This document shows, piece by piece, positions 1,337 to 35,500 of a stretch of 64,000 bases of DNA. Below the pieces are notes generated by a model, which was not told the origin of the DNA, searched no databases, and saw nothing but the letters and a program-made list of their open reading frames with translations. Where the stretch lies: the NCBI RefSeq assembly GCF_023055435.1, contig NW_025964001.1, forward strand, positions 4,092,001 to 4,156,000. Direction: 5' to 3'. The stretch comes from Haliotis rufescens (Eukaryota). The stretch's first letter is position 1; every line of letters starts with the position of its first letter. The position numbers and the translations under genes were made by a program.

Positions 1337-1440
1337 TGACTGTAGCATGAATAATGTTAGAAACACACAGTTAGTTATGTTTAATCTGTACATGGTAACG
1401 TTGATTACTATGATGTTAACACACAAAATGCTGGCCTTAC

Positions 1441-4400
1441 CTGCGCCTTGGCTGAGATTATTTGCTCCATGCTGTTGTTGGCACCCTGCAGTCCGTTGAT
1501 CTTGCCCAGGGCAAAGCTGGCCGCGTTCAGAACTTCAAGACTGTTGACATCCACGTTGAACAGACCCCCGGGCATACCTATGTCCCGCCTTTTGGCGCTG
1601 GTGCAACTATGGTGGGTCATATCGGTCATGTGGCTCCAAGGCTGGTCCCAGATAGTCACATCACAGATTTGAGTCTGAAACACACACACACACACAGTCA
1701 TCAATTACACGATCAAGACGCATATATACGTGTGGTTAGATGTATTTACTGGAAACTGGATCCATGACACGACAGATGTATTGGCTAGATACGGTGGGTC
1801 ATTACACGACCAAGATGTATTGGTTAGATACGGTGGGTCATTACACGACCCAGAGGTATTGGTTAGATACGGTGATTCATTCAACGGCCCAGATGTATTG
1901 GTTAGATACGGTGATTCATGACACAACCCAGAGGTATTAGCTGGATACGGTGGGTCATTACACGACCCAGATGTATTGGCTAGATACGGTGGTTCATTAC
2001 ACGACCAAGATGTATTGGCTAGATACGGTGGTTCATAACATGACCCAGAGGTATTAGCTGGATACGGTGATTTATGACGCGACCAGATGTATTGGCTAGA
2101 TATGGTGGTCCATTACACGATCAAGATGTATTGGCTAGATACGGTGGTTCATTACACGACCAAGATGTATTGGCTAGATACGGTTGTTCATGACACGACC
2201 CAGAGGTATTGGCTAGATACGGTGGTTCATTACACGACCAAGATGTATTGGCTAGACACGGTGGTTCATGACACGACCCAGATGTATTGGCTAGATACGG
2301 TGGTTCATTACACGACCAAGATGTATTGGCTAGATACGGTAGTTCATAACATGACCCACTGGTATTAGCTGGATACGGTGATTTATGACGCGACCAGATG
2401 TATTGGCTAGATACGGTGGTTCATTACACGACCAAGATGTATTGGCTAGATACGGTGGTTCATATCATGACCCAGAGATATTAGCTGGATATGGCGATTT
2501 ATGACGCGACCAGATGTATTGGCTAGATATGGTGGTCCATTACACGACCAGGGTGTATTGGCTAGATACGGTGGTTCATATCATGACCCAGAGATATTAG
2601 CTGGATACGGTGATTTATGACGCGACCAGATGTATTGGCTAGATATGGTGGTCCATTAACACGATCAAGATGTATTGGCTAGATATGGTGGTCCATTACA
2701 CGACCAGGGTGTATTGGCTAGATACGGTGGTTCATATCATGACCCAGAGATATTAGCTGGATACGGTGATTTATGACGCGACCAGATGTATTGGCTAGAT
2801 ATGGTGGTCCATTACACGACCCAGATGTATTAGCCATATACGGTGATGGACAAAGCTCATGGCATTGCTGAGTAAACTTCAAATGTCTCAGTCCTAGGCA
2901 AACAAACTTCAGCTGGAGTAGTATGATGGGTTTATGAAATATATTTACTTTTAATAAAGCAAAAAAAACCTTCCCATAATGACAAGAAATCTCTGTTGAA
3001 AACACGTTTTTTATACGAGACATACCTGGGTTCCATCACTCAGGCGGATCTTCAGCATGTAGTTGATGCCAGAAACCACCTGAAATGATATAAAATTGTT
3101 GCATTGAGGCCAGAGAAAACTCAGATCTTCTCTTAATAATGACATATGATCAATATCGGACAGAACACCCACACAGAGAAACCAGGAAACGACAACAAAC
3201 ATCAAAACTTAAAAAAAGATAGATGACGTAGTCATAACACACAAAATGCACATTTATAAATACTGTTTTATCATTACTGTATATTTATAAACGGTGACTG
3301 ATGTCAGTAATCAACTCTAGAAATTCTCATTTTGGTCAATTCCAAAGACATAGACATTATCAGGCTTCAGTGTTCATGGTTAGTGTTTATTCGGGTATTT
3401 ATTATCCCAAAACACACAACCGTGATAACGTTTTTATCAAATAATGTCATTCTTATATATCATTACGTAACAATGTCAGTCAGTCTGAAAGTGACAACTT
3501 GTCAATTCAGTTCCAACTGAAACACTATCTTGACGACAGTGACGTAACTACCACATAGCAAAAAAACCCAATTGACCATAGGTACTTTTTCAATTTGCGT
3601 TTCGCGGCAATCCATCGGTCCGCCCACTGGAGCAGTTTCCCTTTACGAAAGGGAAGCTACTCTAGTCTGTAAAACGCCAAGTTTGTTTACGTTTCGTAAC
3701 GGGATTACAGATTTCAGATTTCCCACACAGTCGCAAAATGAAACAAGGTATATTTCGGACATATACTGAACTGCAAAAGAAACGTCACCCCAAGTAACAT
3801 TGCTGAAAAGTTTACATTTAAATATCTGGGTAATTTTTGTCAAAGTTTCTAAAATTTAACATTACCTTGTCCGGAAAAATGAAATTTGATGACAAAAAAA
3901 CAAAGCGGATGACAATAAAACGGATCGCCCAAACGCATCACGGCAATGGCCATGGTAACCCGATGCACGTGAGTTCCGTGCAAATTGAAATGCACATGCG
4001 TTCCCCCATTTCTTGCCCTATAAAAATCCACCCAGATCGGATAACATTTATTCGTTATTGAATTGCTACCACATGCTAAGATTGACAAGAAATCAGTGAC
4101 ACCAAGCCCTTGGACAATTACAAGCTGGACAAACCGCCTTGCAAGTAGCCAATGCATTTCAAATCCACGTAAGGACCATATACAGGCTCCAGCAACGGCA
4201 CCAGACAACCAACACTACAGATAGTGGAAGATCAAGGGTCACCACTCGACGTCAGGATCGTCAGATTGTGCGACAGCATCTTCAAGATCGCTTTGTTACT
4301 GCTGCGGAAACTGCTCGACAGACCATGGGGATACACCAGAGACACATTAGTGTGTACAACGTGCGTCGACGATTGACGAGCAGACACCTCCACTGTCACA

Positions 4401-7097
4401 GGCCACACTGAGGACCCATTCTGACACCACGTCATCGCCGGGACCGTCTTCAGTGGGCAACACAGCACCAGCATTGGCGCCACCAGCAGTTGAGAAGAGT
4501 CCTCTTCTCAGGCGAGAGCCGTTACTGTGTCTCAACAGCAGATGGGAGAGAGAGAGTCTGTCGACGCCGTGGGGAACGTTATTCAGATGATTGTGTTGAT
4601 GAGAGAGACTCGTGGGGTGGTCCGAGCATCATGGTGTGAGGTGGAATTGGTCTTGCACAGAGGGTCGGCCCTCTGGTCTTCCAGAACATCGGTCCAGGGA
4701 GAGGCAATGGTGTCACAGCAGCTCGGTACATTGATCAAGTCTTGAGACCACACGCTATACCTAATTTGGCACGTCGCCGCAACCACGAATTTCAGCATGA
4801 TAAAGCCCGTGCCCACACTGCGAGAGCAACAAGAGACTTCCTACAGCAGAACGGCATCAAAACCATGCAGTGACCTGCCCTCAGTCCCGATTTAAATCCC
4901 ATTGCACCTGTAGGACGAGATTCAAAGACGGCTGAATGACGTCCGACCAAGGCCGACAACTGCAGCTGAACTGCATCAGGCGTTCCTCAGAGTGTGGCCT
5001 CCTGTGCCTATGGCCTTCATTAACCGCTTCATCCATTCCATGTATCGACGTTGAACGGCAGTCATCAATGCACATGGCGGACACACGAGATACTGACTTG
5101 TGATGCCATTTTCTCAGAGACTAATGTTGTGTTTCACTTTAAGAATATTTGACACTTTAATTTCAACCTTGATGATCAGTTTTGCCAAGTTTCATCTTTT
5201 TAATATGTCTCAAAGTATGTTTACAGTGTTTGGACAAATAAGGTTTCTCATATATCTATCCATGGTGACGTTTCTTTTGCGGTTCAGTATATTTCGTCCA
5301 AATGCAATTGTGTTTAATTCGAGGTCTACAAGTACAGAAATGTAACAGATACCTCGACTGTATTGATATTTTCCGTGTCACAGACTATTATTTATGTAAT
5401 GATAACAATTATCCTTGTAATTTGTCCAGGTACCCGACCATTAGTTCTGAATCGATCGCCGATTGACAAGGGTGATTCCATATTTGTTTGTTAACACTGA
5501 AAGTAGTACCCGCCTGACATCTCACATTTGCATCTTTATCCGAAAATGACCCTTTATCCGACTTTAGCCTACCGAGAAACCTACCCATTATATGATATAT
5601 GCAAGATATGATAGTTTATCCTCCTACTAACATACTTGGGTCTGGGCAGAGATGACTTGGTCCAGACTGTTGTCAGCCCCCTGTAGGCCGTTCAGTGTAA
5701 ACACAGCATAGAGCGCCATCCTCTGGATTTCTGGATCGGTGACATTGGCGGGGGTTGGAGCACCAACAAGCACGGCCCGCTTGCTGCTTGCAGTACATGC
5801 ATGCGTGGTTAATCGCTTGCCGTGTAGAATTGAATCAGAATAAAGGGTGACATCGCAGATCTGGGTCTGAAACACATCACTGCAATCATGTTATAAATGA
5901 GTTGAAATATGAATATCAAAAGGCTATTCTCAGGATATGGTGTGTAATTTCAAGCACACTTGTTATCCTGCTCCTTTTGATATCCACCTTATTACCACAC
6001 TGCAGTTTCATGTCCATTCTTGATTTGATGAGCTGCCATGAGCAAAGTCCTGTAACATGTCACGGGAGAGGTTGGGTAGAGAAGAGGTTAAAGCGTTCTC
6101 TCATTACTCGAAAGACCCTGGCTCGAACCCACACATGGTTACAATGTGTTAAAAGCGAGCATGACGCTCAGTCACTCATCAAATACTGCTGCCCCCAAAC
6201 GCCCGTCGAGACCAACAAGGACAGAAACAACATCTGCAGTGATGTTGTCGCCAGATGTTGACGGACTGGGTCAACGTGTCCTGCGCATCCGACAGCAGAC
6301 GCAGTGAGTGAGAGTGATAGAGGCACATTAGCATGTTAGCAGCTATATATATGTCAAGGAATGGCTCGTACGCAATGTTACACAGGTGTATACCGTATAT
6401 CTGATAGCCTGTGACATATGGCCTGAATATTTCAGTGAAGGTGTAAAACTCTGAAGAGAACTCACCGTCTGTCCGTTCTGCACCTTGAGGGACAGAAAGT
6501 AGTTGAAGCCAGCAATGCCGAAGGCACCGGCGCCAGGGACAACCTGTGAGGGAGGACAGTAATTGAGTCCAAATGATCAACTTTGGAAATAAATGGTATG
6601 AATCACATGCATTATCGATAGCAAATGATAAATTGCAAGTGTTGTTTAACGCAGCTGTATATCCAGGAATATGCGAGTTGTTGTAAGTACTTAAATTCTG
6701 GACCAGACAAACCAGTGTTACCATGACAACGACCCAGGCAACCTTGACAACTGATCCACTTAATTTGGCTTTGCGCCAATCTTAAGATACTAGGGACATA
6801 CTTGTCCCCGGAATCTTTGTTTACAATCTGTTTTGAAACATACCCAAATATACACGTTTTGGCGGACCAGGTGAGGTACACTCACTATTTACTGCGGAAG
6901 TAGGGACAGGCATATAGACAGACACCTACTTGAGTTTTAGCATTCAGAACAGACACGAGGCTTGCGTTCAGCTGGGTAACGGCGAAGCTTGACATCTGCT
7001 GAATGTCCCCTCTGGTCACGTCAGCATCCTTGGGGCTGCTTAAGAGTTGAGACGTGGCTAGTGGTAACACCACCAGGACCAGAGCTAGTATGTTCAT
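1441..7097 (-). CDS. Multicystatin paralogue (copy A), first five exons; continues beyond the left edge of the window
   Basis: Exons 6930-7097, 6466-6543, 5636-5866, 3026-3079, 1441-1674, all GT-AG, phase 0 and open. Same signal peptide as copy B. Linkers SSKR and AKRR. Domain 2 has QVVSG and QPW; domain 1 is divergent (QVVPGAGAFGIAG). Confidence 0.85.
1705..2845. repeat. 39-bp minisatellite in intron 4 of copy A
   Basis: Unit CATTACACGACCAAGATGTATTGGCTAGATACGGTGGTT, degenerate, just under 30 copies. Confidence 0.92.
3764..5289 (+). mobile_element. Tc1-family transposon with both TIRs and a disabled transposase, in intron 3 of copy A
   Basis: TIRs TACTGAACTGCAAAAGAAACGTCACC and GGTGACGTTTCTTTTGCGGTTCAGTA flanked by TA. 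Transposase remnants RVTTRRQDR, QHDKARAH and SPDLNPI with stops. Confidence 0.9.
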
Positions 7098-13014: not shown

Positions 13015-13142
13015 ATTTAGTGCAAAATGTTTATTTGTAAACAAAAACATCAACTATAAAATATAACAACACTATATATTGACAAGAAAACAGCAAATCA
13101 CTTGAAGAAGAGAGCACAGTCCGTGGATAGGTTTGAACCCAT
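13015..13142 (-). other. Probable non-coding last exon (3' UTR) of copy B with AATAAA
   Basis: A GTATG donor directly follows the TAG at 13576. Acceptor tcttttcag ends at 13143; AATAAA at 13030-13035 (minus strand). Paralogous segment at about 27450-27576. Confidence 0.55.
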
Positions 13143-13575
13143 CTGAAAAGATATTCAATCACACAATAAATATAATGTCAGAAGAACTATATCCGTATCA
13201 GTAGGAGTGCTTATCTCGAAAGATTATCACTAATGGCCTGGAGCAAGGCACACTTTTCGAGAATAACCGAGAGTTACGAGGAATAATTGGTAAGTTTGAG
13301 TTGCGAGCAGGTTATTCTAAATATTACATGTAGTTTTTTAGGTTTTTTTAATCTGAAAAAATGCAGCTGCAGGAGGGCTTCCTGTTGACACATCAGCTCA
13401 GTTGGCCCGACGTCGTTTGTGACGTCATGAACCACCAGCCTCTTTGCAAACAATGAAAACAAAGGAACAATTGGAAAATAAAACAATCAGAATTAAGCAA
13501 ATAATGTTCAGTGAGAATAACTGAAAATGATATCCTCGATATCTGTGTCCCTATGGGTAAAACAATATAGCATAC

Positions 13576-16500
13576 CTAGGCCAGTTGTCCACATGAGTCG
13601 GATACCAGCTGATATTTAGGATCATTCCACGCCTGGTACCACACCGACACCGTGCACGCCATACGCTGCAGCAAAGAAACAAAGACTCACCAACCTAAAT
13701 AACAAAGACTTAATAAAACAAAACAAGCCATAATGAGAAATCTTATTTTCCCCGACACCATGTTTCTGAAGAACATGGCCCTTATCTCTGTTTACCTGGG
13801 GCATGCTGTTGCTGGCGGGACAGTCGGTGATTCCTTTGCCGGTGCTGTCGTCGTTGTTCATGCAAGAGGATGTCACAAGGTGAAGGTCAAACGAGTACTT
13901 CATGCCAGCCACAACCTGTAGACAGTCAAATTGATCTTCAACAACAGAATAACACGACCTTACGTCACATACCACACCTAGAGGTTTCAATGGTGTAGGC
14001 TTCCAAAGGTTATATCTTTGGAGCAATCATTAGGCGTTCCTTGTATTCCAACATGAACACACACGAATAGCCCGGTTTCAAGTAAACGGCCTTAAAGAGT
14101 GATAATTTGATGTTAAGGCTTAAGGGGACAATCTATTTGCCTAATATTTCATATAATCAAGCTGAGGGGTAGATCATTTCATTTCACGGTTGGTGATATA
14201 AAAATGTTGGGAAAAGATAGATTTGTATGACCCACGTCGCACTTAAACTTTACCAGCCTCCATATAGCTGGAATATTGCTACGTACGGCGTTAGACAACA
14301 AACAAATACACTGTGCCACCACTCCCATCTGATGTCTTAATTACCAATAATGACGTCTGTGTTAACAAAACTAAAGAGAGTGTATAAATACGTTAATTGT
14401 TATGACTTCTTATATTGTGCTGCGTGTCCAGATGTGTGGATACCAACAGTGTACATTCATAACGGAAGACGACCTGTGAAGATCCAGGCTAGAATAGGTC
14501 TTCAACAACCCATGCTTGTCGTAAGAGGCGACTATGCTTGTAAGAGGCGACTAACTGGATCGCATGGTCAGGTTCCATCCATACCAATCAGAGACCACAC
14601 CACAATTTGAGAACAAGGTATTTCGCTGAATTGGTTGATGCATGTCATCATGTCCAAAATGCGTGAATTGATGCTCATGATATCATTCACTGGATTGTCT
14701 GTTCCAGACTCGATGATTTAGAGACCGCCGTCATATAGTTTGACTATTGCTGAGTATGGTGTTTAACAAAACATAATGGACGACACAGCTTCGGTAGTAA
14801 TAATAGGGTGTCAAACGTTGCATCATTGGTTTATCCTTAGGGATTCCTTGTATTCCTTTTGATGAAAGAACTGACTGACGATGATCTCGTTCAGTGTTAT
14901 GGGGTATACCTGTTGTGTGACGTGGTCCACTTTCTCAGTCACCATCCGGAACATGTTGTTCATCTTTCCATTCAAAGCGTCTTCTACAAACGACACAGCT
15001 TGCTGCACTGGAGCCGTGAGATTGGCGGGCTCCACACCTCCCACAAAAAGACCTCTCTTGCTGACAGCGGAGCATTTGTGCTCTGTCACCTTCTTTGTGT
15101 TGGTCCAGGATTGGTACCATATCCTCACTTCACACATCTGGGTCTGGGGGTATACAGCACAACCATTAACAGAGTGAGTGAGTGTGCTTTACTGACAGTT
15201 TAAAAATACCACAGCTTTAGTTTGAAAGAGATCTTAAGAGCAAAAACAAAATATATAGAAATGTATAAAGCGGTGTTCTTCTTATGAAAAATGGCATACT
15301 CATTTTACATCTTCAATCTCATAGTGCCCAACTAGTTACAACTACTGAAAACAAATCTTAGCTCACCTTATCTCCATTCTGAAGACTCAGGGTAAGGATG
15401 TAGTTAATACCGGAGACGATCTGAAAGAAAGACATTTTTGAGATGTCGTGCGTCTGAATCCATTTCTTTGACACATACATGAATGGGTATAATGTGATGA
15501 TTGTAGGTCTACACGCAGAAGAAACGTTCCCAAGAACGTATTTAAACAATGTATTTCTATTAACTGTTCTTCAACACTATCCTATGCATTATTGAACAAT
15601 AATACACATTAACAGAAACATCCGTACTTGTTTTCTGGCGTTAACGACTTTGACTAGAGAGTTCTGTTCTCCTTGAAGTCCGTTGATCTCCGTGACAGCG
15701 AAGTTGGCCACTTCCTTAATCTCTGCACTGTTGACGTCCACAGCAGTGACGCCCCCGAGAAGACCCAGTGCACGCTTTGTCACCTGGGTACAGCTGTGCT
15801 GTGTCATCTCCAATTTGTTGAGCCAGGGCTGAGACCAGACCTTCACGTTACAGATCTGGGTCTGAGGGCAGACAGGAGACATAATGATCAGGTAACAGGT
15901 GTAGAATAGAGGCATAGTTGAACAGGTGTAGCGTTACAGGTGTACCGCTGAGAATGTTTCTAACTACTGTCCAGATCTTCACACTAGATCTAGATCTGCG
16001 GACAGACAGGGGGCTTATTAGTCAGGTAACAGTTATAGAACAACATAAAGTACATCATCCTCAAAACATTTAGTTTTAGAATGTATCTGACATCTATCAA
16101 AACAAATAATATAACAGGACTCACCTTGTCCCCTTCCTTAATACGTATGGCCAGGACGTAGTTCACTCCAGCAACAACCTGAAACGTTTGAAGAAACGTT
16201 TGAAGAAGTATAAAGGACATGCATTGTGCACTGTGTGTACTACCTGTATAATTATGTACTGCTTAAGAAATATCTTAGGTAAAGCTCAGGCAACCTCTCA
16301 CAATATTTGTCACAGAAATATCATTATTGCATGCTGCTTCTGGTATAGGCCTGATACAATACCATTTTCCTTGACACAAGTAAGCTTTGGTTATGGGACA
16401 TGTATACAGCCAAACGATCTTGTAGAATTATGAGTAATATGTACATGTGTAAAGTCAATGCTGGCCTTACTTGAGTTTTGGCTGAGATAATTTGCTCCAT

Positions 16501-19500
16501 GCTGTTCTGGGCACCCTGCAGTCCGTTGATCTTGCCGAGGGCAAAGTTGGATATGTTCAGTACTTCAAGGCTGTTGACGTCCACGTTGGTCAGACCCCCG
16601 GGCATCCCGTTCCGCTTGGTGGCGGTGGTGCAGCTATGGTGGGTCAGCTTGGTCATGTGGGTCCAGGGCTGGTCCCAGATGGTCAAGTCACAGATCTGGG
16701 TCTGTAGCAAAGTCATCGATTACATGACCGGGACGAGTGGTCACATGTATTGACTGGACACAGTGATCCATTACACGACCAGGGCGAGTGGTTAGATGTA
16801 TTGACTGGACACAGTGATCCATTACACGACCAGGGCGAGTGGTTAGATGTATGGACTGGACACAGTGATCCATTACACGACCAGGACGAGTGGTTAGATG
16901 TATTGACTGGACACAGTGATTCATTACACGACCAGGGCGAGTGGTTAGATGTATTGACTGGACACAGTGATCCATTACATGACCAGGACGAGTGGTTAGA
17001 TGTATTGACTGGACACAGTGATCCATTACATGACCAGGACGAGTGGTTAGATGTATTGACTGGACACAGTGATCCATTACACGACCAGGACGAGAGTATG
17101 TAAGATGTATTGACTGGACACAGTGATCCATTACATGACCAGGACGAGTGGTTAGATGTATTGACTGGACACAGTGATCCATTACATGACCGGGACGAGT
17201 GGTCACATGTATTGACTGGACACAGTGATCCATTACATGACCAGGACGAGTGGTTAGATGTATTGACTGGACACAGTGATCCATTACACGACCAGGACGA
17301 GTGGATGGATGTATTGACTGGACACAGTGATCCATTACATGACCAGGACGAGTGGTTAGATGTATTGACTGGACACAGTGATCCATTACATGACCAGGAC
17401 GAGTGGTTAGATGTATTGACTGGACACAGTGATCCATTACACGACCAGGACGAGAGTATGTAAGATGTATTGACTGGACACAGTGATCCATTACATGACC
17501 GGGACGAGTGGTCACATGTATTGACTGGACACAGTGATCCATTACACGACCAGGACGAGTGGTTAGATGTATTGACTGGACACAGTGATTCATTACACGA
17601 CCAGGACGAGTGGTTAGATGTATTGACTGGACACAGTGATCCATTACACGACCAGCGCGAGTGGTAAGATGTATTGACTGGACACAGTGATCCATTACAC
17701 GACCAGGACGAGTGGATGGATGTATTGACTGGACACAGTGATCCATTACACGACCAGGGCGAGTGGTTAGATGTATTGACTGGACACAGTGATCCATTAC
17801 ACGACCAGGACGAGTGGTTAGATGTATTGACTGGACACAGTGATCCATTACACGACCAGGACGAGTGGATGGATGTATTGACTGGACACAGTGATTCATT
17901 ACATGACCGGGACGAGTGGTTAGATGTATTGACTGGACACAGTGATCCATTACACGACCAGGACGAGTGGTTAGATGTATTGACTGGACACAGTGATCCA
18001 TTACACGACCAGGACGAGTGGTTAGATGTATTGACTGGACACAGTGATCCATTACACGACCAGGACGAGTGGATGGATGTATTGACTGGACACAGTGATC
18101 CATTACACGACCAGGGCGAGTGGTTAGATGTATTGACTGGACACAGTGATCCATTACACGACCAGGGCGAGTGGTTAGATGTATGGACTGGACACAGTGA
18201 TCCATTACACGACCAGGACGAGTGGTTAGATGTATTGACTGGACACAGTGATCCATTACATGACCGGGACGAGTGGTAAGATGTATTGACTGGACACAGT
18301 GATCCATTACACGACCAGGACGAGTGGATGGATGTATTGACTGGACACAGTGATCCATTACACGACCAGGACGAGTGGTTAGATGTATGGACTGGACACA
18401 GTGATCCATTACACGACCAGGACGAGTGGTTAGATGTATTGACTGGACACAGTGATCCATTACACGACCAGGACGAGTGGTTAGATGTATTGACTGGACA
18501 CAGTGATCCATTACACGACCAGGGCGAGTGGTTAGATGTATTGACTGGACACAGTGATTCATTACACGACCAGGGCGAGTGGTTAGATGTATTGACTGGA
18601 CACAGTGATCCATTACACGACCAGGACGAGTGGATGGATGTATTGACTGGACACAGTGATCCATTACACGACCATGACGAGTGGTTAGATGTATTGACTG
18701 GACACAGTGATCCATTACACGACCAGGGCGAGTGGTAAGATGTATTGACTGGACACAGTGATCCATTACATGACCAGGACGAGAGTATGTAAGATGTATT
18801 GACTGGACACAGTGATCCATTACACGACCAGGACGAGAGTATGTAAGATGTATTGACTGGACACAGTGATCCATTACACGACCATGACGAGTGGTTAGAT
18901 GTATTGACTGGACACAGTGATCCATTACACGACCAGGACGAGAGTATGTAAGATGTATTGACTGGACACAGTGATCCATTACATGACCAGGACGAGTGGT
19001 TAGATGTATTGACTGGACACAGTGATCCATTACACGACCAGGACGAGTGGTTAGATGTATTGACTGGACACAGTGATCCATTACACGACCAGGACGAGAG
19101 TATGTAAGATGTATTGACTGGACACAGTGATCCATTACATGACCAGGACGAGAGTATGTAAGATGTATTGACTGGACACAGTGATCCATTACACGACCAG
19201 GACGAGAGTATGTAAGATGTATTGACTGGACACAGTGATCCATTACACGACCAGGACGAGAGTATGTAAGATGTATTGACTGGACACAGTGATCCATTAC
19301 ATGACCAGGACGAGTGGTTAGATGTATGGACTGGACACAGTGATCCATTACACGACCAGGACGAGTGGTTAGATGTATTGACTGGACACAGTGATCCATT
19401 ACACGACCAGGACGAGAGTATGTAAGATGGATTGGTTGGAATTAGCTCAGCTTCTGTTTTCGCTATCCATGGCACATTGCCGAGTAAACTCCAAATATAT

Positions 19501-22500
19501 TAGTCCTCGACAAACACGGTTGAGCTGGAGTAGTTTGACGGGTTTATTAAACCCTCTCCATTGTCTAATAAATACTCATAAGACTATTCGTCACAAGAAA
19601 TCTCTGCTAAAAACACATTATTTTATACAAGACATACCTGGGTTCCATCAATCAGGCGGATCTTCAGAATGTAGTTGGTGCCAGCAACCACCTGAAATAA
19701 GATAAGATTGTTGTGTTGACGCCAGAGAAACAACTCAGATCTTCTCTTAATAATGAAATATAAACAATATCTGAAACAGTGAAATCAATAAACGAAAACA
19801 AACATCAAAATTTGAAAAGATGTTAAAATCGATACTGCAGTCGGAAACACATATTTATAAATTATGTCATAGCACACTATTTACTTTATAAACGGTGACT
19901 TAGCCTAGACCTATACCAGGAGACACCAATATTAGGTGAGTTATCGAAGAAGAATTTGTCACATGACAAATTATATCCGCCTTCTAAGATACCTGGGTCT
20001 TGGCAGAGATGACTTGATCCAGACTGTTTTGGGCCCCCTGTAGGCCGTTCAGTGTAGTCACAGCAAAGGTCGCCATCCTCTGGATATCTGTACGGTTGAC
20101 ATCGACGGAGGTTGGAGCACCAACAAGCACGGCCCGCTTGCTGCGTGTAGTACATGCATGATGGGTAACACGCTTGTCGTTCAGCCATGCACGTGACCAG
20201 ATGGTAACAGTGCAGATCTGGGTCTAGAACACATCACCGCAATTGTGTCATAAGGATTTGAAAAAAAGAAAATCAAACACAATCGTGGTGATTCAAGTAC
20301 AGAATCCGTCCCCATTACATGTGAACAGCCTTAACCATGGCAACACCATCTGAAATGGAGTCTCTGGTTCGAATCCACACATGGTAACATTGTGTTAAGT
20401 GCATTCTGGTTGCCCCGCCATATGGATGGGATAGTGTTAAAAGCGGCGTCATCAACATTTGACCCTACTCGTCTGCAACACTTCGCGGGACTCTAAAACA
20501 CCCCTATCTGCGTCCCATGGAATCGTCTGGACCAACAAGGACAGAAGCAACAACAGTTGGGATGATGTCTCCAGATGTTGATGGGGAGCAGACGTAGTGA
20601 ATGAGAATGAGAGAGCAATAATAACTATTAACTATTCATGTACATCGACGAATGCTTGTTTTTTACCAGTGGGATGGCCACAGGGAGAGAGAGAGACAGA
20701 CAGACAGACAAAAGACAGACAGACAGAGAGAGAGAGAGAGAGAGGGGGAGGGGGTATGCACAATTCTTCAGAGGCCGGGATCTTAAGGGCTGAGTCACCC
20801 AATAATGAGGACATGTAAGCTTAGTGAGTGCTGGCATATCAGTGTGTAAAAATCTGAAGAGAACTCACCTGCTGTCCGTTCTGTATCTCGATGGTCAGTA
20901 AGTAGTTGACGCCAGAGACAACCTGTGAAGAAGAAGAAGTAAAAGCTCAGCATCTGAAACACAACTCCGGTGTTCCGAACTCGGATATAGCGAAGTATAG
21001 GCCATCATAATATTGAGTTCAAATAATCAACATTGGAAAACATAGTACAGAACTATAAATCACACGCATTATAGTAAGCTGTGCAATTCCCTCCTGGTGT
21101 CGTTGATAAACAGTGAATGTTGTTTAACGTTGCAATTTGCAATTTCCCAGCAATATTATGACGATGGTAAGTAATCGTGTTTGAACCAGGCAAACCAGTA
21201 AGCGATAGCATGAGCAACGATCCGCTATCGGGGCCTGATGGCACGTTGTCAGAGCTTGACCAACCCCTCCTGTTGGCTCTTAAACCAAGCTTGGGATGCA
21301 GGAGACCTAATCTCCCCCAGAGTCCTCACCAGGTTCCCAACTAATAAAAATAAGGCTGTAATAAGTATGACAATAATAAAAAGACCAACCCCTGGATTTA
21401 CATGAAATGCGTTAGTTCTCAGAATAGATTATGTTTAGTTGAGTCAAATATACAATTTAATTTATTTTTATATGATGACACCCTAATATATCTTTTTTTT
21501 ATTCACGGTGCCTAAATTCAATCCCCAAATAGTTTATTGTCCACTTTTTTATAAGCATAAAATCTATTTATTCCGCAAAAACAAATGCTGGACTACCTCT
21601 TTGATAACATCAATGTACACTTTGGAGGTAGAACATTTGAGCAACATTTGTGCTCCCCTACTTGCTAATCTGTTTCTCTATGCATATGAATCGGAGTTTC
21701 TCTTCGGATTGGTAAAAAGAAAAAAAAGGGTAATTTATCTGAGAGGTTTAACTTTAACTTCAGGTATATCGAGGATCTGATGTTGTTCAATAACAATCAA
21801 AGAGCCAGTTCCCTTCCACTGTTTTACCCACCTGAACTAGAAATAAAGGAGACCAGTGAGACCGCCACGTCCATTTCATATTTAGATCTATGCATAAAGA
21901 TTCAGAGTGACAAAACATTCTCCACAAGACTGTATGACAAGAGGGATGACTTCAACCTTCCAATAGTCAACTTTCCCTTCATGTCTAGCAATATTCCTGC
22001 AGCTCAAGCCCGTGGTGTCTACTTTCACAAGTTTTGAGGTTCAATCGAGAATGGTCTCAAAATTGCAAAGAGCGTCATGCAACTCTTGCTTGGAAGTGGT
22101 TTGATGAAGGTTGCAACATTCAGGGCCTCAGTTAAGCTTTCAAATATTTTATGGTAGACATGTGGATGACATTTCCAAATTTGCCGCATCAGTGACAAGA
22201 ATGATGTCTGATGCAATTCCCTATTTTTTTCCCGTTCCCGTGTTTTTTAAGGTGAACAATTAACTTGCCATTGCATGTGTTTGTGACGGTTGCCACCGGT
22301 AGGGCAGGGCACGCTCCCCTTTTCGCGAACACCTGGTATCATCACTATTTGATAGTGATTCATAAACGGATACTTATGAAAACAGTCGGAATCACACAAT
22401 TAACTCTGCTTTTTGGCAAGCATGTCTTATTAATATGGAAAATAGATTGTCGCTTATATCTACACAGCTCTTAGCAATATTCTAACAATATCACGGCGGA

Positions 22501-22802
22501 GGACACTAGAAATGAGCTTCCGACATTGTACCCATTTCAGGCCTTCGCGTTAACCACTAGGCTACCCCGCCGTCCCTATTTACTGCAGAGGTAAAAACAG
22601 ACATATAGATACCTACTTGAGTTTTAGCATCCACTACAGACACCAGAGTGTTCTGTGACCCGAGGAGCGTGTTCAGCTGGGTTAGGGCGAAGCTTGCCAT
22701 CTGCTGAATGTCGTCCCTGTTCACGTCGACAGCCACGGGGCCGCCTATGAGTTGAGACGTGGCTAGTGGTAACACCACAAGGACCAGAGCTAGTATGTTC
22801 AT
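13576..22802 (-). CDS. Secreted five-domain multicystatin precursor (copy B, complete, 513 aa)
   Basis: Exons, all GT-AG and phase 0: 22617-22802, 20869-20922, 19993-20223, 19638-19691, 16471-16701, 16125-16178, 15628-15861, 15367-15420, 14910-15143, 13796-13915, 13576-13665 (1542 nt including TAG). Signal peptide MNILALVLVVLPLATS. Five QxVxG motifs formed across junctions (QVVSG, QVVAG, QVVAG, QIVSG, QVVAG). N-terminal G/GG in each domain, PW-like second loops (RAW, QPW, QPW, QSW, QAW) and paired cysteines. Linkers RSKR, ATKR, VTKR, VSKR. Confidence 0.9.
14468..14770 (+). mobile_element. SINE-like dispersed repeat (third family) in intron 9 of copy B
   Basis: GACCTGTGAAGATCC...CAACCCATGCTTGTCGTAAGAGGCGAC...GGATTGTCTG recurs at about 24377-24565 and 30527-30860, and on the minus strand at 45040-45300 and 55545-55810. 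Confidence 0.7.
16720..19428. repeat. 51/54-bp minisatellite (about 50 copies) in intron 4 of copy B
   Basis: Unit TGACTGGACACAGTGATCCATTACACGACCAGGACGAGTGGTTAGATGTAT, with a 54-bp variant containing GAGAGTATGTAAG. Confidence 0.97.
21585..22410 (+). mobile_element. Penelope-like retroelement RT fragment in intron 1 of copy B
   Basis: CAPLLANLFLYAYE, YPPELEIKET, SYLDL and LYDKRDDFNLPIVNFPFMSSNIP. The paralogous copy is at about 39585-41240, interrupted by a minisatellite. Confidence 0.75.
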
Positions 22803-29637: not shown

Positions 29638-32584
29638 CTAGGCCAGTTGTCCTCATGAGTCGGATACCAGCTGATATTTAGGATCATTCCATGCCTGGTA
29701 CCACACCGACACCGTGCACGTCATACGCTGCAGCAAAGAAACAAAGACTCAACAACCTAAATAACAAAGACTTAATAAAATAAAACAAGCCATAATGAGA
29801 AATGTTATTTTCCCCGACACCTTGTTTCTGAAGAACATGGTCCTTATCTCTGTTTACCTGGGGCATGCTGTTGCTGGCGGGACAGTCGGTGATTCCTTTG
29901 CCGGTGCTGTCGCCGTTGTTCATGCAAATGGATGTCACAAGGTGAAGGTCAAATGAGTACTTGATGCCAGCCACAACCTGTAGACAGGCAAATTGATCTT
30001 CAACAACAGAATAACACGACCTTACGTCAAATACCACACCTAGAGGCTTCAATAGTGTAGGCTTCCAAAGGTTATATCTTTGGAGCAATCATTAGGCGTT
30101 CCTTGTATTCCAACATGAACACACACGAATAGCCCGGTTTCAAGTAAACGGCCTTAAAGAGAGATAATTTGATGTTAAGGCTCAAGGGGACAATCTATTT
30201 GCCTAATATTTCATATAATCAAGCTGAGAGGTAGATCATTTCATTTCACGGTTGGTGATATAAAAATGTTGGGAAAAGATAGATTTGTATGACCCACGTC
30301 GCACTTAAACTTTACCAGCCACCATATAGCTGGAATATTGCTACGTACGGCGTTAGCCAGCAAACAAATAAGCTTTGCGACCACTCCCATCTGAGGGAAC
30401 GATGTCTTAATTATCAATAATGACTTCTATGTTAACAACACTTGCTACGTTAATTGTTATGACTTCTTATATTGTACTGCGTATCCTGATGTGCGGATAC
30501 CAACAGTGTATATTCCTAATGGAAGACGACCTGTGAAGATCCAGGTTAGAATAGGTCTTCAACAACCCATGCGTGTCGTAAGAGGCGACTATGCTTGTCC
30601 TAAGAGGCGACTATGCTTGTCGTAAGAGGCGACTAACTGATCGCATGGTCAGGTTCAATCCATACCAATCAGAGATCACACCATAATTTGAGGATAAGTT
30701 ATTTCGCTGAATTGGTTGATGCATGTCATCATGTCCCAAATGCGTGAATTGATGCTCATGCTATCAATCACTGGATTGTTTGTTCCAGACTCGATGATTT
30801 AGAGACCGCCGTCATTAAGTTTCACTATTGCTGAGTATGGTGTTTAACAACAAACAAACAAACGTTGCATCATTGGTTCAATCTTTAGGGATTCCTTTTG
30901 ATGAAAGAACTGTATGGCGATGATCTCGTTCAGTGTTATGGGGTATACCTGTCGTGTGACGTGGTCCACTTTCTCAGTCACCATCCGGAACATGTTGTTC
31001 ACCTTTCCAGTCAAAGAGTCTTCTGCAAACGACACGGCTTGTTGCACTGGAGCCGTGAGATGGGCGGGCTCCACACCTCCCAGAAAAAGACCTCTCTTGC
31101 TGACAGCGGAGCATTTGTGCTCTGTCACCTTCTTTGTGTTAGTCCAGGATTGGTACCATATCCTCTCTTCACACATCTGGGTCTGGGGGTATACAGTACA
31201 ACCATTAACAGAGTGAGTGAGTGTGCTTTACTGACAGTTTACAAATATCACAGCTTTAGTTTGAGAGAGAACTTAAGAGCAATAACAAAACCCGTGTATA
31301 AAGCGATGTTCTTCTTATGAAAATGGCAACCCATTTTACACCTTCAAACTCATAGTGCCCAACTAGTTACAACTCCTGAAAACAAATCTTAGCTCACCTT
31401 ATCTCCATTCTGAAGACTCAGGGTAAGGATGTAGTTAATACCAGAGACGATCTGAAAGAAAGACATTTTTAGAAACTTAAATACGTCGTGCGTCTGAATC
31501 CATTTCTTTGACACATACATGAATGGGTATAATGTGATGATTGTAGATCTACACTCAGAAAAATGTTCCAAAGAACGTATTTGAACAATGTATTTCCATT
31601 AACTGTTCTTCAACACTATCCTATGCATTATTGAACAATGACACACATCAACAGAAACGTCCGTACTTTTTTGACTAGAGAGTTCTGTTCTCCTTAAAGT
31701 CCGTTGATCTCCGTGACAGCGAAGTTGGCCACTTCCTTAATCTCTGCACTGTTGACGTCCACAGCAGTGACGCCCCCGAGAAGACCCCCGGCACGTTTTG
31801 TCACCTGGGTACAGCTGTGCTGTGTCATCTCCAATTTGTTGAGCCAGGGCTGAGACCAGATCTTCACGTTACAGATCTGGGTCTGAGGGCAGACAGGAGA
31901 CATAATGATCACGTATCAGGTGTAGAATAGAGGCATAGTTGAACAGGTGTAGCGTTACAGGTGTACCGCTGAGAATGTTTCTAACTACTGTCCAGATCTT
32001 CAAGCTACAGATCTAGATCTGCGGACAGACAGGTGGATTAATAGTCACGTAACGGTTGTAGAACAACATAAAGTATATCACCCTCAAAACACCCTCAAAA
32101 TGTATCTGATATCTTTCAGAAAATATAATAAAACAGGACTCACTTTGTCCCCTTCCTTAATACGTATGGCCAGGACGTAGTTCACAACAGCAACAACCTG
32201 AAACGTATGAAGAAGTATAGATGGACACACAAGGATCCCCCTTGTTCACTGTGTGTACTGAGTGTATACTAGTACTTATGTACTGCTTAAGAAATCACTT
32301 ATGTAAAAGGCAACCTCTCACAATATTTGTCACAGAAATATCATGATTGCATGCTGCTTCTGGTATAGGCCTGATACAATACCATTTTCCTTGACACAAG
32401 TAAGCTTTGGTTATGGGACATGTATACAGCCAAACGATCTTGTAGAATTATGAGTCATATCAACATGTGTCAAGTCAATACTGGCCTTACTTCAGTTTTG
32501 GCTGAGATAATTTGTTCCATGCTGTTCTGGGCACCTTGCGGTCCGTTGATCTCGCCCAAAGTTGGCCATGTTCAGTACTTCAAG
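29638..32584 (-). pseudogene. Multicystatin copy C, decayed 3' exons (domains 3-5)
   Basis: Exon remnants 32491-32584, 32144-32197, 31667-31882, 31398-31451, 30949-31182, 29858-29977, 29638-29727. Lesions relative to copy B: 5-nt deletion near 32555, QVVAG changed to EVVAV, CAA to TAA at 31694-31696, 18-nt deletion near 31668 removing the motif Gln, TGT to TGA at 29653-29655. Confidence 0.88.
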
Positions 32585-35500
32585 TGGTGAGGTCACCAAG
32601 ACCAATACGTACCTGTTTTCTTTTGGTATTCCGACTCTTCCACCTTCAATTCGAGCAGGATATTGTAGTATCAAGGTTGATATGTAAATACCAAATCCAC
32701 TTAATGCTACAAGTGTCAACATTATGGCCATGGTTCCAGAGCTTGGGACAAACAGGCTGCGTGTCATCGCTGTGGTGGCAATTGTGCAGACAGTTATGAG
32801 TGTGATCAAGATCCCTCATGTGTGAATTGTGGCGGTAACCCTGTTTCCTCGTCAAAAGAATGTCCAGTATGGAAACGCGAGTCAAAGGTTGTCAAAGTCA
32901 AACATGAGCGGAACATCTCTTTTCAGGATGCTAAGAATATTGTTTTAGATGAAGAACAGTAGGTTCGAAATTCTTACTCTGCCGTTGTTTCACGACCAAA
33001 TTGACGGCCTGTTCCCCAGCCTGTTTCACACACCACTGTCGGATGTCAGACAGATTACACATTGACCACAACGGAATCACCTGAAATTCTTTCACTTTCT
33101 TCTAATTCAGCAACTGTTTTAGAAACTGCCAGTTCTCATACACCTACCCCAAAACCAGCTAGGAAATCAAATCCAAATGTTGACTACTCATTAACAAAAG
33201 GCAAATAAGGGTCTCCCTAAGGGTCATAGAGATCCTGTTACTATGTTTAATAGGTTTGGTGTGTTCGAGGACATGGATGTGTCTTCACAAAACACACGAT
33301 CCAGATGCCATTCCCCTAGGAAAAAAGGCTGTGAGCGGTCTCCTGTCATTGCACCATAATGCATAGTAACACAATTATACAATGGAACTGTCGATGGCTA
33401 AGGGCGAATTTTGATGAGGTTAAATTTCTATCTAAAGAACTTAATCCCGTGGCTTTTGTCTTCAAGAAACATATTTAAGAGAATGCGATAATCTTGACTA
33501 CCGTCAATATCATATGTTTCATTCATATGCGAAGGTTACCAATGGTAAAAGAACGGGTGGTGCCAGTGTACTCGTTCGCGTGGAACATTACACAGTGCTG
33601 TACCACTAAATACCAACCTACTGGCGGTTGCAGTACGAATAACTCTGCATATTGCTATAGCTTTATGTTCTCTGTATTTACCACCATCCACTGCACTTCA
33701 GATAAAAGATTTAGATACTCTTATCCTAATCCATTTTTGCTTATGGGCGATCTTAATGGTCACAACCCATTGTGGGGTTCGGGTGATCAAAATTATAAAG
33801 GAAAAATACTTGAAAAGTTGCTCCAGAAGCAGGGTCTCTTTCTATCTAATGATGGTAGCAACACGTATTTACATCCAGCGACTGGTACTTACTCAGCTCT
33901 TGATTTAGCCTTTGCTGATCCGTCTCTTTTGGATGAGTTCTCATAGTCAGTACATGATGACCTGTGTGGGAGTGATCATTTCCCAACCATACTCAAAACC
34001 TTTGAACATTTTATTGATGATCCTGATCAGATCAGATCATTTTCGGATAAATTAATAAACATTGCCACAGAAACCATGCCCAAGACCTCGACAAAAATCC
34101 ACATGTAAAAACACCATGGTGATGATTGTAGAAAAGCTAGGAAACATAGGAAAAAGTCTGAAAGAGTGTTTAATAAACAGCCCACGGCCAATAATTTAAA
34201 CTGCTTACGAATGTCAAAAGCAAAGGTTCGTAGAACAATTAAACAAAATGAACGTACAAGCTGGAAATAGTTTGTTTCGAAAATACATTCTCGTACCCCC
34301 CTTAATAAAGTATGGAATATGATAAGAAAGATAAAAGGAAAGGGGTCTCAGCGCAATATTCAGCATCTACAATCATGATGTATTGACATCAAAACAGGAT
34401 ATTGCTAATAAGTTGGCAGAAACGTTCAGCCAAAATTCCTCATCTGCCAACTATGACCCAAAATTTCTAAAATTTCTAAATCAGCAGGAAAGGAAAATTC
34501 TGAATTTTCGGTCTGATGGTTCAGAGGATTACAACGAATCCTTTTCCTTGACTGAGTTACAAGAGGCTTTGAAGAAGGCTCATGATACAGCCTCTGGGCC
34601 AGATGACGTACATTATCAATTTTTGAAACATCTTCCTGACCCTTCTCTGTTAACCCTTTTATCCATATTTAATAGTATATGGGAAAATGGTAACTTCCCT
34701 CCTTCCTGGCATGAGGCTACTATAATACCTGTGCCTAAACCAGGTAAGGATCACACATTCTTCAAATTACAGACCTATTGCTCTGACAAGTTGTCTCTGT
34801 AAAACCATGGAACAGATGATCAACTGGCGTCTCGTTTGGTTTCTTGAATCAAATAATCTGATCACAGACATTCAGTGTGGTTTTAGACACCAGAGGAGCA
34901 CCATCGATCATCTTGTCCGATTGGAATCATTTGTACGGAATGGCTTTGTAAACAAGCAGAATGTTGTGTCGATCTGTTTTTATCTTGAGAAGGCTTACGA
35001 TACCACATGGAAGTATGGTATATTAAAAGATCTCCACGACATGGGTTTACATCACTCGCTTTTTAGAAGATAGAAAATTTAAAGTTAGAGTAGGCTCCAC
35101 ATTGTCCGAAATATATGATCAGGAAATGGGGGTCCCTCAGGGCAGTATTTTATCAGTGACACTTTTTAGCACACAAATCAACATTCTTGCTAAGGTTTTA
35201 AATGAAAATATTGATGGTTCGTTGTTTGTTGACGATTTTAATGTTTCATGCCGTGGTGCAAATATGAATACCATTGAGAGACAATTACAACTTTGTCTCT
35301 ATAAAATACAAAAATGGGCCTTTAGAAAATGGTTTTAAATTTTCCAAAACTAAAACCTGCTGTGTTCATTTTTGCAACAAACGGAAACTGCATAAAGATC
35401 CAGAATTGACTTTAAATAATATTCCAATAAAAGTGGTCAAAGAAACCAAGTTTTTTTGGTATTACCTTTGATAAAAGTTATCATTTAAACCTCACATTAA

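What the first reader, a model, noticed from the sequence alone, without database searches (positions are those of the whole stretch)
13576..22802. A prohormone-like cystatin polyprotein: five inhibitor domains each separated by a Lys-Arg cleavage site
Seen: splicing 11 exons gives a signal peptide plus five cystatin domains, and every inter-domain linker ends in a dibasic site (TTRSKR, TTATKR, TQVTKR, SAVSKR; copy A has ASSKR and SAKRR). Cleavage there would give N-termini AVLVGAP, NGMPGGL, ALGLLGGV and GLFVGGV. That puts the conserved cystatin Gly 5-6 residues from a free end, much like QLIGGP after signal removal. Established: KR and RxKR are proprotein-convertase/furin sites, and the N-terminal Gly segment, QxVxG and PW form the papain-family binding wedge. 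Inference: one transcript delivers a fixed-ratio cocktail of five separately released inhibitors with different specificities. Multi-domain cystatins are known in other lineages; whether this convertase-punctuated form has been described I cannot check. Caveat: domain 1 also contains an internal KR (DKRV).
Basis: partly seen in the sequence, partly recalled or inferred. Interest (0 to 1): 0.9.

Follow-up and report, generated by a model that had tools for sequence, protein, structure and literature searches.

The report
Abalone five-domain cystatin precursor gene
A red-abalone gene, already annotated as "multicystatin-like", encodes a secreted chain of five cysteine-protease-inhibitor domains joined by strictly conserved Lys-Arg sites; these probably let cellular convertases cut it into five small inhibitors, a design shared with insect, bivalve and amphioxus relatives.

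Summary
On the minus strand, 11 exons (22802..13576) with GT-AG, phase-0 introns join into a 513-aa protein: a signal peptide plus five cystatin domains. It is 100% identical to RefSeq "multicystatin-like isoform X1 [Haliotis rufescens]". Spliced contigs from four public runs confirm seven of the ten junctions. Each of the four linkers carries Lys-Arg 4-5 residues before the next domain's conserved Gly.

The convertase reading is plausible but unproven. All 41 inter-domain linkers in ten Haliotis multicystatins (three species) keep [KR]R. The flanking linker residues, linker length and the KR codons themselves vary. The internal KR of domain 1 is not conserved. In an AlphaFold model of the H. 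asinina orthologue, three of the four KR sites lie in the lowest-confidence stretches and the fourth in a weaker dip. The genome encodes convertase P-domains.

Dibasic linkers 3-5 residues before the conserved Gly recur in multicystatins of insects, an isopod, a bivalve and amphioxus. A Manduca precursor of this kind is published, so the design is not new. Only linker 1 (RSKR) fits the furin consensus, and no protein-level evidence was available. I rate it a new member of a known kind, of moderate interest.

The parts
22617..22802 (-). Exon 1: start codon, signal peptide (residues 1-16) and the N-terminal half of cystatin domain 1, up to the Q of QVVSG
   Evidence: Pfam Cystatin E=2.5e-5 on this exon alone. 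N-terminus identical to P0154.
20869..20922 (-). Exon 2 (54 nt): the VVSG..NGQQ hairpin of domain 1
   Evidence: Canonical AG and GT sites, phase 0.
19993..20223 (-). Exon 3: C-terminal strands of domain 1, linker 1 (R-S-K-R, codons 20145-20134) and the N-terminal half of domain 2
   Evidence: This is the only linker with the furin-type R-x-K-R motif.
19638..19691 (-). Exon 4 (54 nt): the VVAG hairpin of domain 2
   Evidence: Its 3' end appears as the loose end joined to exon 5 in the RNA contigs.
16471..16701 (-). Exon 5: end of domain 2, linker 2 (T-A-T-K-R, KR codons 16617-16612) and start of domain 3
   Evidence: The joint 16178/16471 is seen in runs X1, X5 and X7.
16125..16178 (-). Exon 6 (54 nt): the VVAG hairpin of domain 3
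15628..15861 (-). Exon 7: end of domain 3, linker 3 (Q-V-T-K-R, KR codons 15777-15772) and start of domain 4
   Evidence: Used as the query.
15367..15420 (-). Exon 8 (54 nt): the IVSG hairpin of domain 4
   Evidence: The joints 15420/15628 and 15143/15367 are seen in all four runs.
14910..15143 (-). Exon 9: end of domain 4, linker 4 (A-V-S-K-R, KR codons 15059-15054) and start of domain 5
13796..13915 (-). Exon 10 (120 nt): the VVAG hairpin of domain 5 plus an insert carrying the extra Cys pair
   Evidence: Domain 5 has 4 Cys.
13576..13665 (-). Exon 11: last strands of domain 5 and the stop codon; a splice donor follows directly
   Evidence: The loose end at 13576 in all four runs continues at 13142.
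13117..13142 (-). Start of a 3'-UTR exon. The 3'-UTR intron is 13575..13143; the exon's end was not determined.
   Evidence: The loose-end consensus matches here exactly.
1441..7097 (-). The full gene has 13 exons and six domains (610 aa) and continues about 5.3 kb beyond the window's start. Its linkers are SSKR, AKRR, VTKR, QTKR and VNKR.
   Evidence: Identical to P0156, 'multicystatin-like [Haliotis rufescens]'.
29638..41643 (-). Exons 1-4 are intact. Exon 5 is split by about 4.5 kb of inserted DNA. There are in-frame stops in the exon 7 and exon 11 equivalents. The KR linkers it still has are unchanged.

Best explanation
This is the red abalone (Haliotis rufescens) 'multicystatin-like' gene. 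It makes an abundant spliced mRNA for a secreted 513-aa precursor of five family-2 (I25B) cystatin domains strung on short flexible linkers.

Inferred mechanism: the signal peptide sends the chain through the secretory pathway. There kexin/furin-type proprotein convertases cut after the Lys-Arg of each linker, and a carboxypeptidase trims the basic pair. The products would be five separate inhibitors of about 10-13 kDa, made in equal amounts from one mRNA. Each would have a free N-terminal trunk of 4-5 residues before the conserved Gly, the segment that together with the QxVxG and Trp loops forms the wedge entering the cleft of papain-like peptidases.

The five domains are old and individually conserved, so they probably differ in target range. 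Domain 5 is closest to cystatin E/M.

Shown: the gene model, transcription and splicing, the cystatin identity and fold, conservation and predicted flexibility of the KR sites, and convertase genes in the genome. Inferred: the cleavage itself, the enzyme responsible, and the different specificities.
For: 1. The gene model is proven by identity to RefSeq P0154 and by spliced contigs.

2. Cystatin identity:
- Pfam PF00031 matches single exons.
- The 76%-identical H. asinina orthologue P0002 has five PF00031 stretches at E=6.5e-60.
- The AlphaFold2 model of P0002 (mean pLDDT 86.4) shows five helix-plus-sheet units.
- Foldseek matches that model to cystatin C, cystatin E/M and tarocystatin at target TM-scores of 0.8-0.92.

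3. Constraint on KR:
- 41 of 41 linkers in ten Haliotis proteins from three species keep [KR]R.
- The residues between the last Cys and KR, and the linker length, vary.
- The KR codons differ among linkers: AAG CGG, AAG CGT, AAG AGA, AAA CGT, AAA AGA.
- The internal KR of domain 1 is not conserved.

4. Accessibility: pLDDT falls below 50 at residues 108-113, 302-307 and 397-402, and to 61 in the block 201-210, of P0002. These stretches are the KR linkers. pTM is 0.38, which fits beads on a string.

5. Position rule across animals, from the 141 representative hits:
- 171 of 299 inter-domain linkers carry [KR]R, against a background of 0.0031 per dipeptide position in domain cores.
- The P1 Arg lies 3-5 residues before the conserved Gly in 95 of those 171.
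- Among the 43 proteins with three or more linkers, 14 have the motif in all linkers and 9 in none.
- Many insect linkers are full R-x-K/R-R.

6. The own genome has at least five loci with the convertase P-domain PF01483, three of them at 85-93 bits.

7. [quoted passage not shown] From my memory, a cystatin of about 11.5 kDa purified from hemolymph derives from that precursor.
Against: No protein-level evidence was reachable: no N-termini, no product sizes and no tissue labels, because run metadata are coded.

Only linker 1 (RSKR; RTKR or RAKR in the other species) has the P4 Arg that furin-type enzymes need. Linkers 2-4 have Ala or Val at P4. They would need a KR-type enzyme, and it is unknown whether the expressing tissue has one.

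A free N-terminus is not required for inhibition. From established knowledge, the internal domains of kininogen and the uncut potato multicystatin both inhibit, so cleavage is not forced by function.

The conservation evidence comes from paralogues and three congeneric species, so the 41 linkers are not independent events.

The structural support is a model of the orthologue, not of this protein, and low pLDDT is only a proxy for exposure.
Confidence: 0.55

Rival explanations
1. The protein works as an intact five-headed inhibitor, like potato multicystatin or the kininogen heavy chain. On this view the Lys-Arg pairs are not convertase sites in vivo. They would be kept for another reason, such as linker solubility or charge, or binding to an anionic matrix.
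For: Three of the four linkers lack the P4 Arg of the furin consensus. Other animal multicystatins do without dibasic linkers: 9 of 43 proteins with three or more linkers have none, and instead carry long Pro/Ser/Thr-rich linkers. So an uncut array is a viable design. From established knowledge, uncut multidomain cystatins are active. The best PDB sequence match is potato multicystatin 4lzi.
Against: A charge or solubility role would not need exactly K/R-R at a fixed distance of 3-5 residues from the conserved Gly across phyla. It also would not explain invariance in 41 of 41 Haliotis linkers while every neighbouring linker residue varies. Nor does it explain the full R-x-K/R-R motifs in the insect relatives. 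The tendency of proteins to have the motif in all linkers or none points to a processing function.
Confidence: 0.2
2. Cleavage happens, but not as a clean intracellular convertase step at all four sites. One possibility is that only the furin-type RSKR of linker 1 is cut in the Golgi, releasing domain 1 from a four-domain remainder. Another is that the exposed KR linkers are cut after secretion by trypsin-like proteases of the gut, the hemolymph or pathogens. Product ratios would then vary with context and would not be fixed.
For: P4 Arg is present, and conserved across the three species, only in linker 1 (TRSKR, SRTKR, SRAKR). The linkers are predicted to be flexible and exposed, so any Arg-specific protease could cut them. 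From memory, trypsin releases active units from potato multicystatin, and trypsin-like processing was suggested for the Manduca precursor.
Against: A trypsin-like enzyme needs only one basic residue, yet the pair is invariant. The conserved aliphatic or basic P4 with K-R fits kexin-like specificity (from memory of Kex2 enzymology, not tested here). A secreted protein meets Golgi convertases before it meets anything else.
Confidence: 0.2

Closest known systems
RefSeq 'multicystatin-like' proteins of Haliotis (H. rufescens P0154 and P0156, H. rubra P0001 and P0155, H. asinina P0002 and its paralogues)
   Same: P0154 is this very protein (100% identity). The others share the domain order, the exon-encoded modules and a K/R-R in every linker.
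   Different: Domain number ranges from 2 to 8 among the paralogues. These are automatic annotations. None of the open papers I could search describes their function or processing.
Manduca sexta multidomain cysteine protease and cystatin-like inhibitor precursor (Miyaji et al. 2010, Insect Biochem Mol Biol 40:835), with its lepidopteran relatives among the hits (P0044, P0076, P0033)
   Same: A secreted array of tandem family-2 cystatin domains, treated as a precursor of small inhibitors. In the lepidopteran relatives retrieved here, the linkers between the last Cys and the next conserved Gly carry R-x-K/R-R 3-5 residues before the Gly.
   Different: The insect proteins are 1500-2900 aa, have up to 17 domains and are fused to a cathepsin F-like peptidase. 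The abalone protein has five domains and no peptidase, and three of its four sites are plain K-R without P4 Arg. I saw the paper only as a reference title; what I say about its contents is from memory.
Potato multicystatin (PDB 4lzi, 2w9p) and other plant multicystatins
   Same: Tandem cystatin domains in one chain. It is the best solved-structure match by sequence (E=9.7e-33) and by fold. The helix motif of the abalone domains (such as V-A-N-F-A-V-T-E-I-N) resembles the phytocystatin LARFAV-type motif (my reading).
   Different: The plant proteins have no signal peptide, no disulfides and no dibasic linkers (from memory). Multidomain cystatins arose independently in separate lineages (PMC2784779). 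Any release of single domains from the plant proteins is by non-specific proteolysis.
Vertebrate kininogens (three cystatin domains)
   Same: Secreted multi-cystatin chains built by repeated duplication of an exon set. The abalone introns fall after the Q of QxVxG and three residues before the C-terminal Cys pair. From memory, these are the intron positions of vertebrate type-2 cystatin and kininogen domains.
   Different: Kininogen domains stay joined, and the regulated cleavage releases a kinin peptide rather than the inhibitor domains. Kininogens are restricted to vertebrates. 'Kininogen-like' names among the amphioxus and locust hits are automatic labels.
Molluscan cathepsin F-like proteins with N-terminal cystatin domains (scallops P0158 and P0160, limpet P0164)
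   Same: Their cystatin domains are also followed by C-x(n)-K-R just before the next Gly-Gly. The KR-linked cystatin module is therefore older than the abalone cluster.
   Different: They carry an I29 propeptide and a C1 peptidase domain. The H. rufescens cathepsin F-like proteins P0162 and P0163 show no K-R between their two cystatin domains.

Membership tests
Cystatin family 2 (MEROPS I25B, Pfam PF00031) | Significant match to the cystatin domain profile | tested here: met
   Single exons reach PF00031 at E=2.5e-5, 1.9e-4 and 2.8e-5. P0154, which is this protein, has PF00031 precomputed. The orthologue P0002 has five stretches at E=6.5e-60.
Cystatin family 2 (MEROPS I25B, Pfam PF00031) | The three-part binding wedge: an N-terminal Gly, the QxVxG first hairpin, and a Pro-Trp or x-Trp second hairpin | tested here: met
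   All five domains have the Gly (LIGG, LVGA, MPGG, LLGG, FVGG) and a QxVxG motif (QVVSG, QVVAG, QVVAG, QIVSG, QVVAG). All have a Trp loop: PW in D2 and D3, AW or SW in D1, D4 and D5.
Cystatin family 2 (MEROPS I25B, Pfam PF00031) | Secretory signal peptide and two disulfides in the C-terminal half | tested here: inconclusive
   There is a hydrophobic N-terminus with A-T-S before Q17, but no signal-peptide predictor was run. Domain 5 has four Cys as in type-2 cystatins. Domains 1-4 have only the C-terminal Cys pair.
Cystatin family 2 (MEROPS I25B, Pfam PF00031) | Cystatin fold (a helix packed on a five-stranded antiparallel sheet) | tested here: met
   The AlphaFold2 model of the 76%-identical orthologue has mean pLDDT 86.4 and five helix-plus-sheet units. 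Foldseek target TM-scores to cystatin C, cystatin E/M and tarocystatin are 0.8-0.92. The window's own protein was not modelled.
Cystatin family 2 (MEROPS I25B, Pfam PF00031) | Inhibition of papain-like cysteine peptidases | not testable with these tools
   This needs Ki measurements with recombinant domains.
Proprotein-convertase-processed polyprotein precursor | Entry into the secretory pathway | tested here: inconclusive
   The N-terminal signal-like sequence and three N-x-S/T sequons argue for it. No predictor or experiment backs this.
Proprotein-convertase-processed polyprotein precursor | A dibasic (K/R-R) or R-x-K/R-R motif at every unit boundary, conserved in relatives | tested here: met
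   The motif is in 4 of 4 linkers here and in 41 of 41 linkers in ten Haliotis proteins. The codons vary while the residues do not. A full R-x-K-R occurs only at linker 1.
Proprotein-convertase-processed polyprotein precursor | The sites lie in exposed, unstructured segments | tested here: met
   In the orthologue model, pLDDT is below 50 at three KR linkers and 61 at the fourth, with no secondary structure there. This is a prediction only.
Proprotein-convertase-processed polyprotein precursor | Convertases present in the organism | tested here: met
   The convertase P-domain PF01483 matches seven places in the own genome, three of them at 85-93 bits. Co-expression was not testable.
Proprotein-convertase-processed polyprotein precursor | Cleaved products observed with the predicted termini | not testable with these tools
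   No proteomic data were reachable. None of the open papers I searched covers abalone multicystatin.
Insect-type multicystatin-cathepsin F precursor | A C-terminal I29 propeptide and C1A peptidase domain after the cystatin array | tested here: not met
   The protein ends 29 residues into exon 11, right after domain 5. The stop codon is retained in the transcripts. P0154 has only the PF00031 and PF16845 cystatin-type hits, plus a PF03713 hit of unknown weight, and no PF00112.

The most novel reading that the evidence does not exclude
Dibasic-punctuated cystatin arrays may be an ancient, bilaterian-wide class of 'pro-inhibitor' polyproteins that has gone largely unremarked. On this reading, convertase cleavage 3-5 residues before the conserved Gly does more than separate the domains. 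It would activate the internal ones by freeing the N-terminal trunk, so that convertases license cysteine-protease inhibition. The abalone tandem cluster, built of phase-0 cassettes, would tune the composition of the released cocktail by gaining, losing and degrading domains.
Probability: 0.2. Interest if true: 0.65.

Novelty: new member of a known kind. Interest (0 to 1): 0.4.

Why it matters
If the Lys-Arg sites are used, one abundant abalone mRNA delivers five distinct cysteine-protease inhibitors in equal amounts. That is relevant to abalone immunity, digestion and disease resistance in aquaculture.

The wider point is the position rule found here. A dibasic site lies 3-5 residues before the conserved Gly in multicystatins of molluscs, arthropods and amphioxus. 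This gives a sharp, cheap test of whether a free N-terminal trunk matters for these inhibitors: compare the intact chain with the cut chain and with KR-to-AA mutants.

If the sites are not used, this is simply an annotated multidomain cystatin.

Tried and rejected
Searches with the gene model. The joined 11-exon model was never typed or sent to a search tool. Searches went exon by exon, by reference. The exons were joined only inside local scripts, to check the frame and to compare with database proteins. Once P0154 proved identical, database ids were used. Searches failed on my coordinate order and were repeated correctly.

Exon-level Pfam. It was weak for exons 5 and 9 (E=0.2 and 0.12). That is a limit of half-domain queries, not evidence against the family.

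Literature. Ten paper searches found no open paper on abalone multicystatin and none that links multicystatin with furin; the single hit was irrelevant. 'MsCPI' gave only unrelated acronyms. The Manduca paper is not held, and two conference-abstract volumes did not contain it. Two broad queries returned mostly irrelevant papers. The oyster hemolymph paper concerns cystatin B only. The Fasciola paper says nothing on processing.

RNA runs. No holder is recorded as RNA. I infer RNA from the small contig sets, the spliced joints and the exon/intron depth contrast. Tissue and organism labels are coded, so no expression site can be given.

The very high depth at 14213-14757 looked like a small RNA gene. 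Rfam and tRNA scans were empty, and the stretch is an interspersed repeat with more than 8000 first-look candidates in the genome.

dN/dS between the two intact paralogues is 0.81 overall and 1.36 for exon 3. It rests on few sites, and I take it to reflect the degenerate domain 1 of the 610-aa paralogue. I did not use it as evidence for or against the KR reading.

I considered a retrocopy or an assembly artefact. I rejected both because of the introns, the RefSeq identity and three tandem copies with matching structure.
Full report
WHAT IS THERE

The window has no N runs. On the minus strand between 22802 and 13576, eleven exons are bounded by canonical AG and GT sites. All lengths are multiples of three, so every intron is phase 0. 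The exons are 186, 54, 231, 54, 231, 54, 234, 54, 234, 120 and 90 nt long.

Joined in a local script, the exons give an open frame of 513 codons. The protein has a hydrophobic N-terminus followed by five cystatin domains. Each domain is encoded by three pieces:
- the N-terminal trunk and helix, up to the Q of QxVxG;
- a 54-nt hairpin exon (120 nt in domain 5);
- the last strands, which share an exon with the linker and the first piece of the next domain.

The four linkers therefore lie inside exons 3, 5, 7 and 9, not at splice junctions.

INDEPENDENT CONFIRMATION

I did not send the joined model to any search tool. Searches were made exon by exon, by reference.

A search with the H. asinina orthologue returned P0154, 'multicystatin-like isoform X1 [Haliotis rufescens]', 513 aa. 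Its contig is 67,865,795 bases long, the same length as the window's contig. The joined translation is identical to P0154 at every residue. The organism is therefore red abalone, and the gene is already annotated.

Contigs of four small public runs from four studies and three coded organism labels were laid on 13450-16712. They show:
- joints at exactly the predicted borders of exons 5/6, 6/7, 7/8, 8/9, 9/10 and 10/11;
- a loose end at 16704 that reads the reverse complement of the end of exon 4, across the 2.9-kb intron;
- exon depths of roughly 700-4000 against about 0-50 in non-repeat intron bins.

The stop codon is retained. A further intron (13575..13143) follows it directly and leads to a 3'-UTR exon.

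CYSTATIN IDENTITY

- Single exons hit Pfam Cystatin.
- The 76%-identical, colinear H. asinina orthologue P0002 has five Cystatin stretches at E=6.5e-60.
- Its AlphaFold2 model (mean pLDDT 86.4) has five helix-plus-sheet units.
- Foldseek matches that model to cystatin C, cystatin E/M, tarocystatin and potato multicystatin (sequence matches).
- All five domains keep the trunk Gly, QxVxG and the loop Trp.
- Domains 1-4 have one Cys pair and domain 5 has two.
- Predicted products after cutting and trimming are 10.0, 10.1, 10.1, 10.2 and 12.7 kDa.

THE LYS-ARG SITES

The linkers read C-TTRS-KR|AVLV-G, C-TTAT-KR|NGMP-G, C-TQVT-KR|ALGLL-G and C-SAVS-KR|GLFV-G. Of the seven dibasic dipeptides in the protein, four are these.

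The window holds two more tandem copies.
- A six-domain, 13-exon paralogue starts at 7097 and runs about 5.3 kb past the window's start. It is identical to P0156 and has linkers SSKR, AKRR, VTKR, QTKR and VNKR.
- A decayed copy lies at 41643-29638. Exon 5 is split by about 4.5 kb, and there are stops in the equivalents of exons 7 and 11.

In ten Haliotis multicystatins from H. rufescens, H. rubra and H. asinina, all 41 inter-domain linkers carry K/R-R. The residues before and after the pair, and the linker length, vary. The codons differ among linkers (AAG CGG, AAG CGT, AAG AGA, AAA CGT, AAA AGA), so the residues are what is being kept.

It is DKQV in H. asinina and DTQV or DKQV in H. rubra. 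The internal pair is not under the same constraint.

In the orthologue model, pLDDT falls below 50 at three KR linkers and to 61 in the block holding the fourth. pTM is 0.38, which suggests independent domains on flexible tethers.

The genome encodes several convertase P-domains.

HOW GENERAL IT IS

Exon 7, which spans a linker, found 141 representative proteins, most with several cystatin domains. I segmented them with a profile built from the abalone domains. The results:
- 171 of 299 inter-domain linkers contain K/R-R, against a background of 0.0031 per dipeptide position in domain cores.
- The P1 Arg lies 3-5 residues before the conserved Gly in 95 of those 171.
- Among the 43 proteins with three or more linkers, 14 have the motif in all linkers and 9 in none. 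The latter have long Pro/Ser/Thr-rich linkers.

Named carriers include Lepidoptera, a beetle, a locust, a leafhopper, stick insects, the isopod Armadillidium, the bivalve Mactra and amphioxus. Scallop and limpet cathepsin F-like proteins also have C-x(n)-KR just before the next Gly-Gly. Many insect sites are full R-x-K/R-R. The design is therefore old and widespread, not specific to abalone.

LITERATURE

Kordis and Turk (PMC2784779) record multidomain cystatins in lophotrochozoans and arthropods as independent duplications, and do not mention furin. Santamaria et al. (PMC3407033) describe arthropod multicystatins, many of them fused to a C1A peptidase.

[quoted passage not shown] From memory, it derives a hemolymph cystatin of about 11.5 kDa from a 2676-aa precursor.

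No open paper links multicystatin with furin or treats abalone multicystatin.

INTERPRETATION

The best reading is a secreted precursor cut at the linker Lys-Arg pairs by kexin/furin-type convertases into five single-domain inhibitors. Each would have a short free trunk before the conserved Gly. I put this at 0.55.

The main weaknesses:
- Only linker 1 has the P4 Arg of the furin rule. The others, with Val or Ala at P4, need a KR-type enzyme. From memory, kexin tolerates aliphatic P4; this was not tested.
- Uncut multidomain cystatins are known to inhibit.
- No protein data were available.

The rivals are an intact five-headed inhibitor (0.2) and partial or extracellular cleavage (0.2).

The idea of different specificities has indirect support. 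Each domain is 65-83% identical to its H. asinina counterpart but only 22-56% identical to the other domains. Domain 5 alone matches cystatin E/M-type chains.

VERDICT

Novelty is low to moderate, because this is an annotated gene of a known kind with a published insect precedent. The cross-phylum position rule for the dibasic site is the most useful new point.

Noticed in passing
window 16711-19416: Intron 4 holds a 51-bp minisatellite of 52.5 copies with 94% matches. It creates spurious ORFs of 903 and 920 aa on the minus strand and a local rise in GC skew.
   Followed up: partly
window 14213-14757 (intron 9): RNA-like contigs pile up here at depths of 10^4 to 10^5. Rfam and tRNA scans found nothing. 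The stretch is an interspersed repeat with more than 8000 first-look candidates genome-wide, so the depth comes from other loci.
   Followed up: yes
window 13143-13575: A 433-nt intron starts immediately after the stop codon and leads to a 3'-UTR exon beginning at 13142. The same UTR exon sequence, with one mismatch, sits at 27551-27576 below the decayed copy.
   Followed up: partly
window 1441-7097 and about 5.3 kb beyond the window's start (G000:C223:4086722-4099097): The neighbouring 610-aa paralogue has a sixth domain from an extra two-exon cassette. Its domain 1 has lost the trunk Gly (QLLSSP) and the loop Trp, and has an 8-residue insert in QxVxG. dN/dS against copy B is 1.36 for exon 3.
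   Followed up: partly
window 29638-41643: The third tandem copy has exon 5 interrupted by about 4.5 kb (37037 to 32560) and in-frame stops in the equivalents of exons 7 and 11. Exons 1-4 remain intact.
   Followed up: partly
window 47255-47338; also G000:C223 near 4078001-4078210: There is an isolated 25-residue fragment resembling exon 7. About 14 kb before the window's start there are remnants resembling exons 10 and 11. Both suggest further decayed members of the cluster.
   Followed up: no
window 13796-13915 and 14910-15143 (domain 5): Domain 5 is the only domain that matches cystatin M/E-type chains by sequence. By eye, it keeps an Asn-x-Met-Phe stretch where cystatins C and E/M have their legumain-binding Asn. 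It may be a legumain inhibitor as well as a papain-type inhibitor.
   Followed up: no
all exon borders of the gene, 13576-22802: The two introns within each domain fall after the Q of QxVxG and three residues before the C-terminal Cys pair, both in phase 0. From memory, these are the intron positions of vertebrate type-2 cystatin genes, which would make the gene structure ancient. This was not tested here.
   Followed up: no
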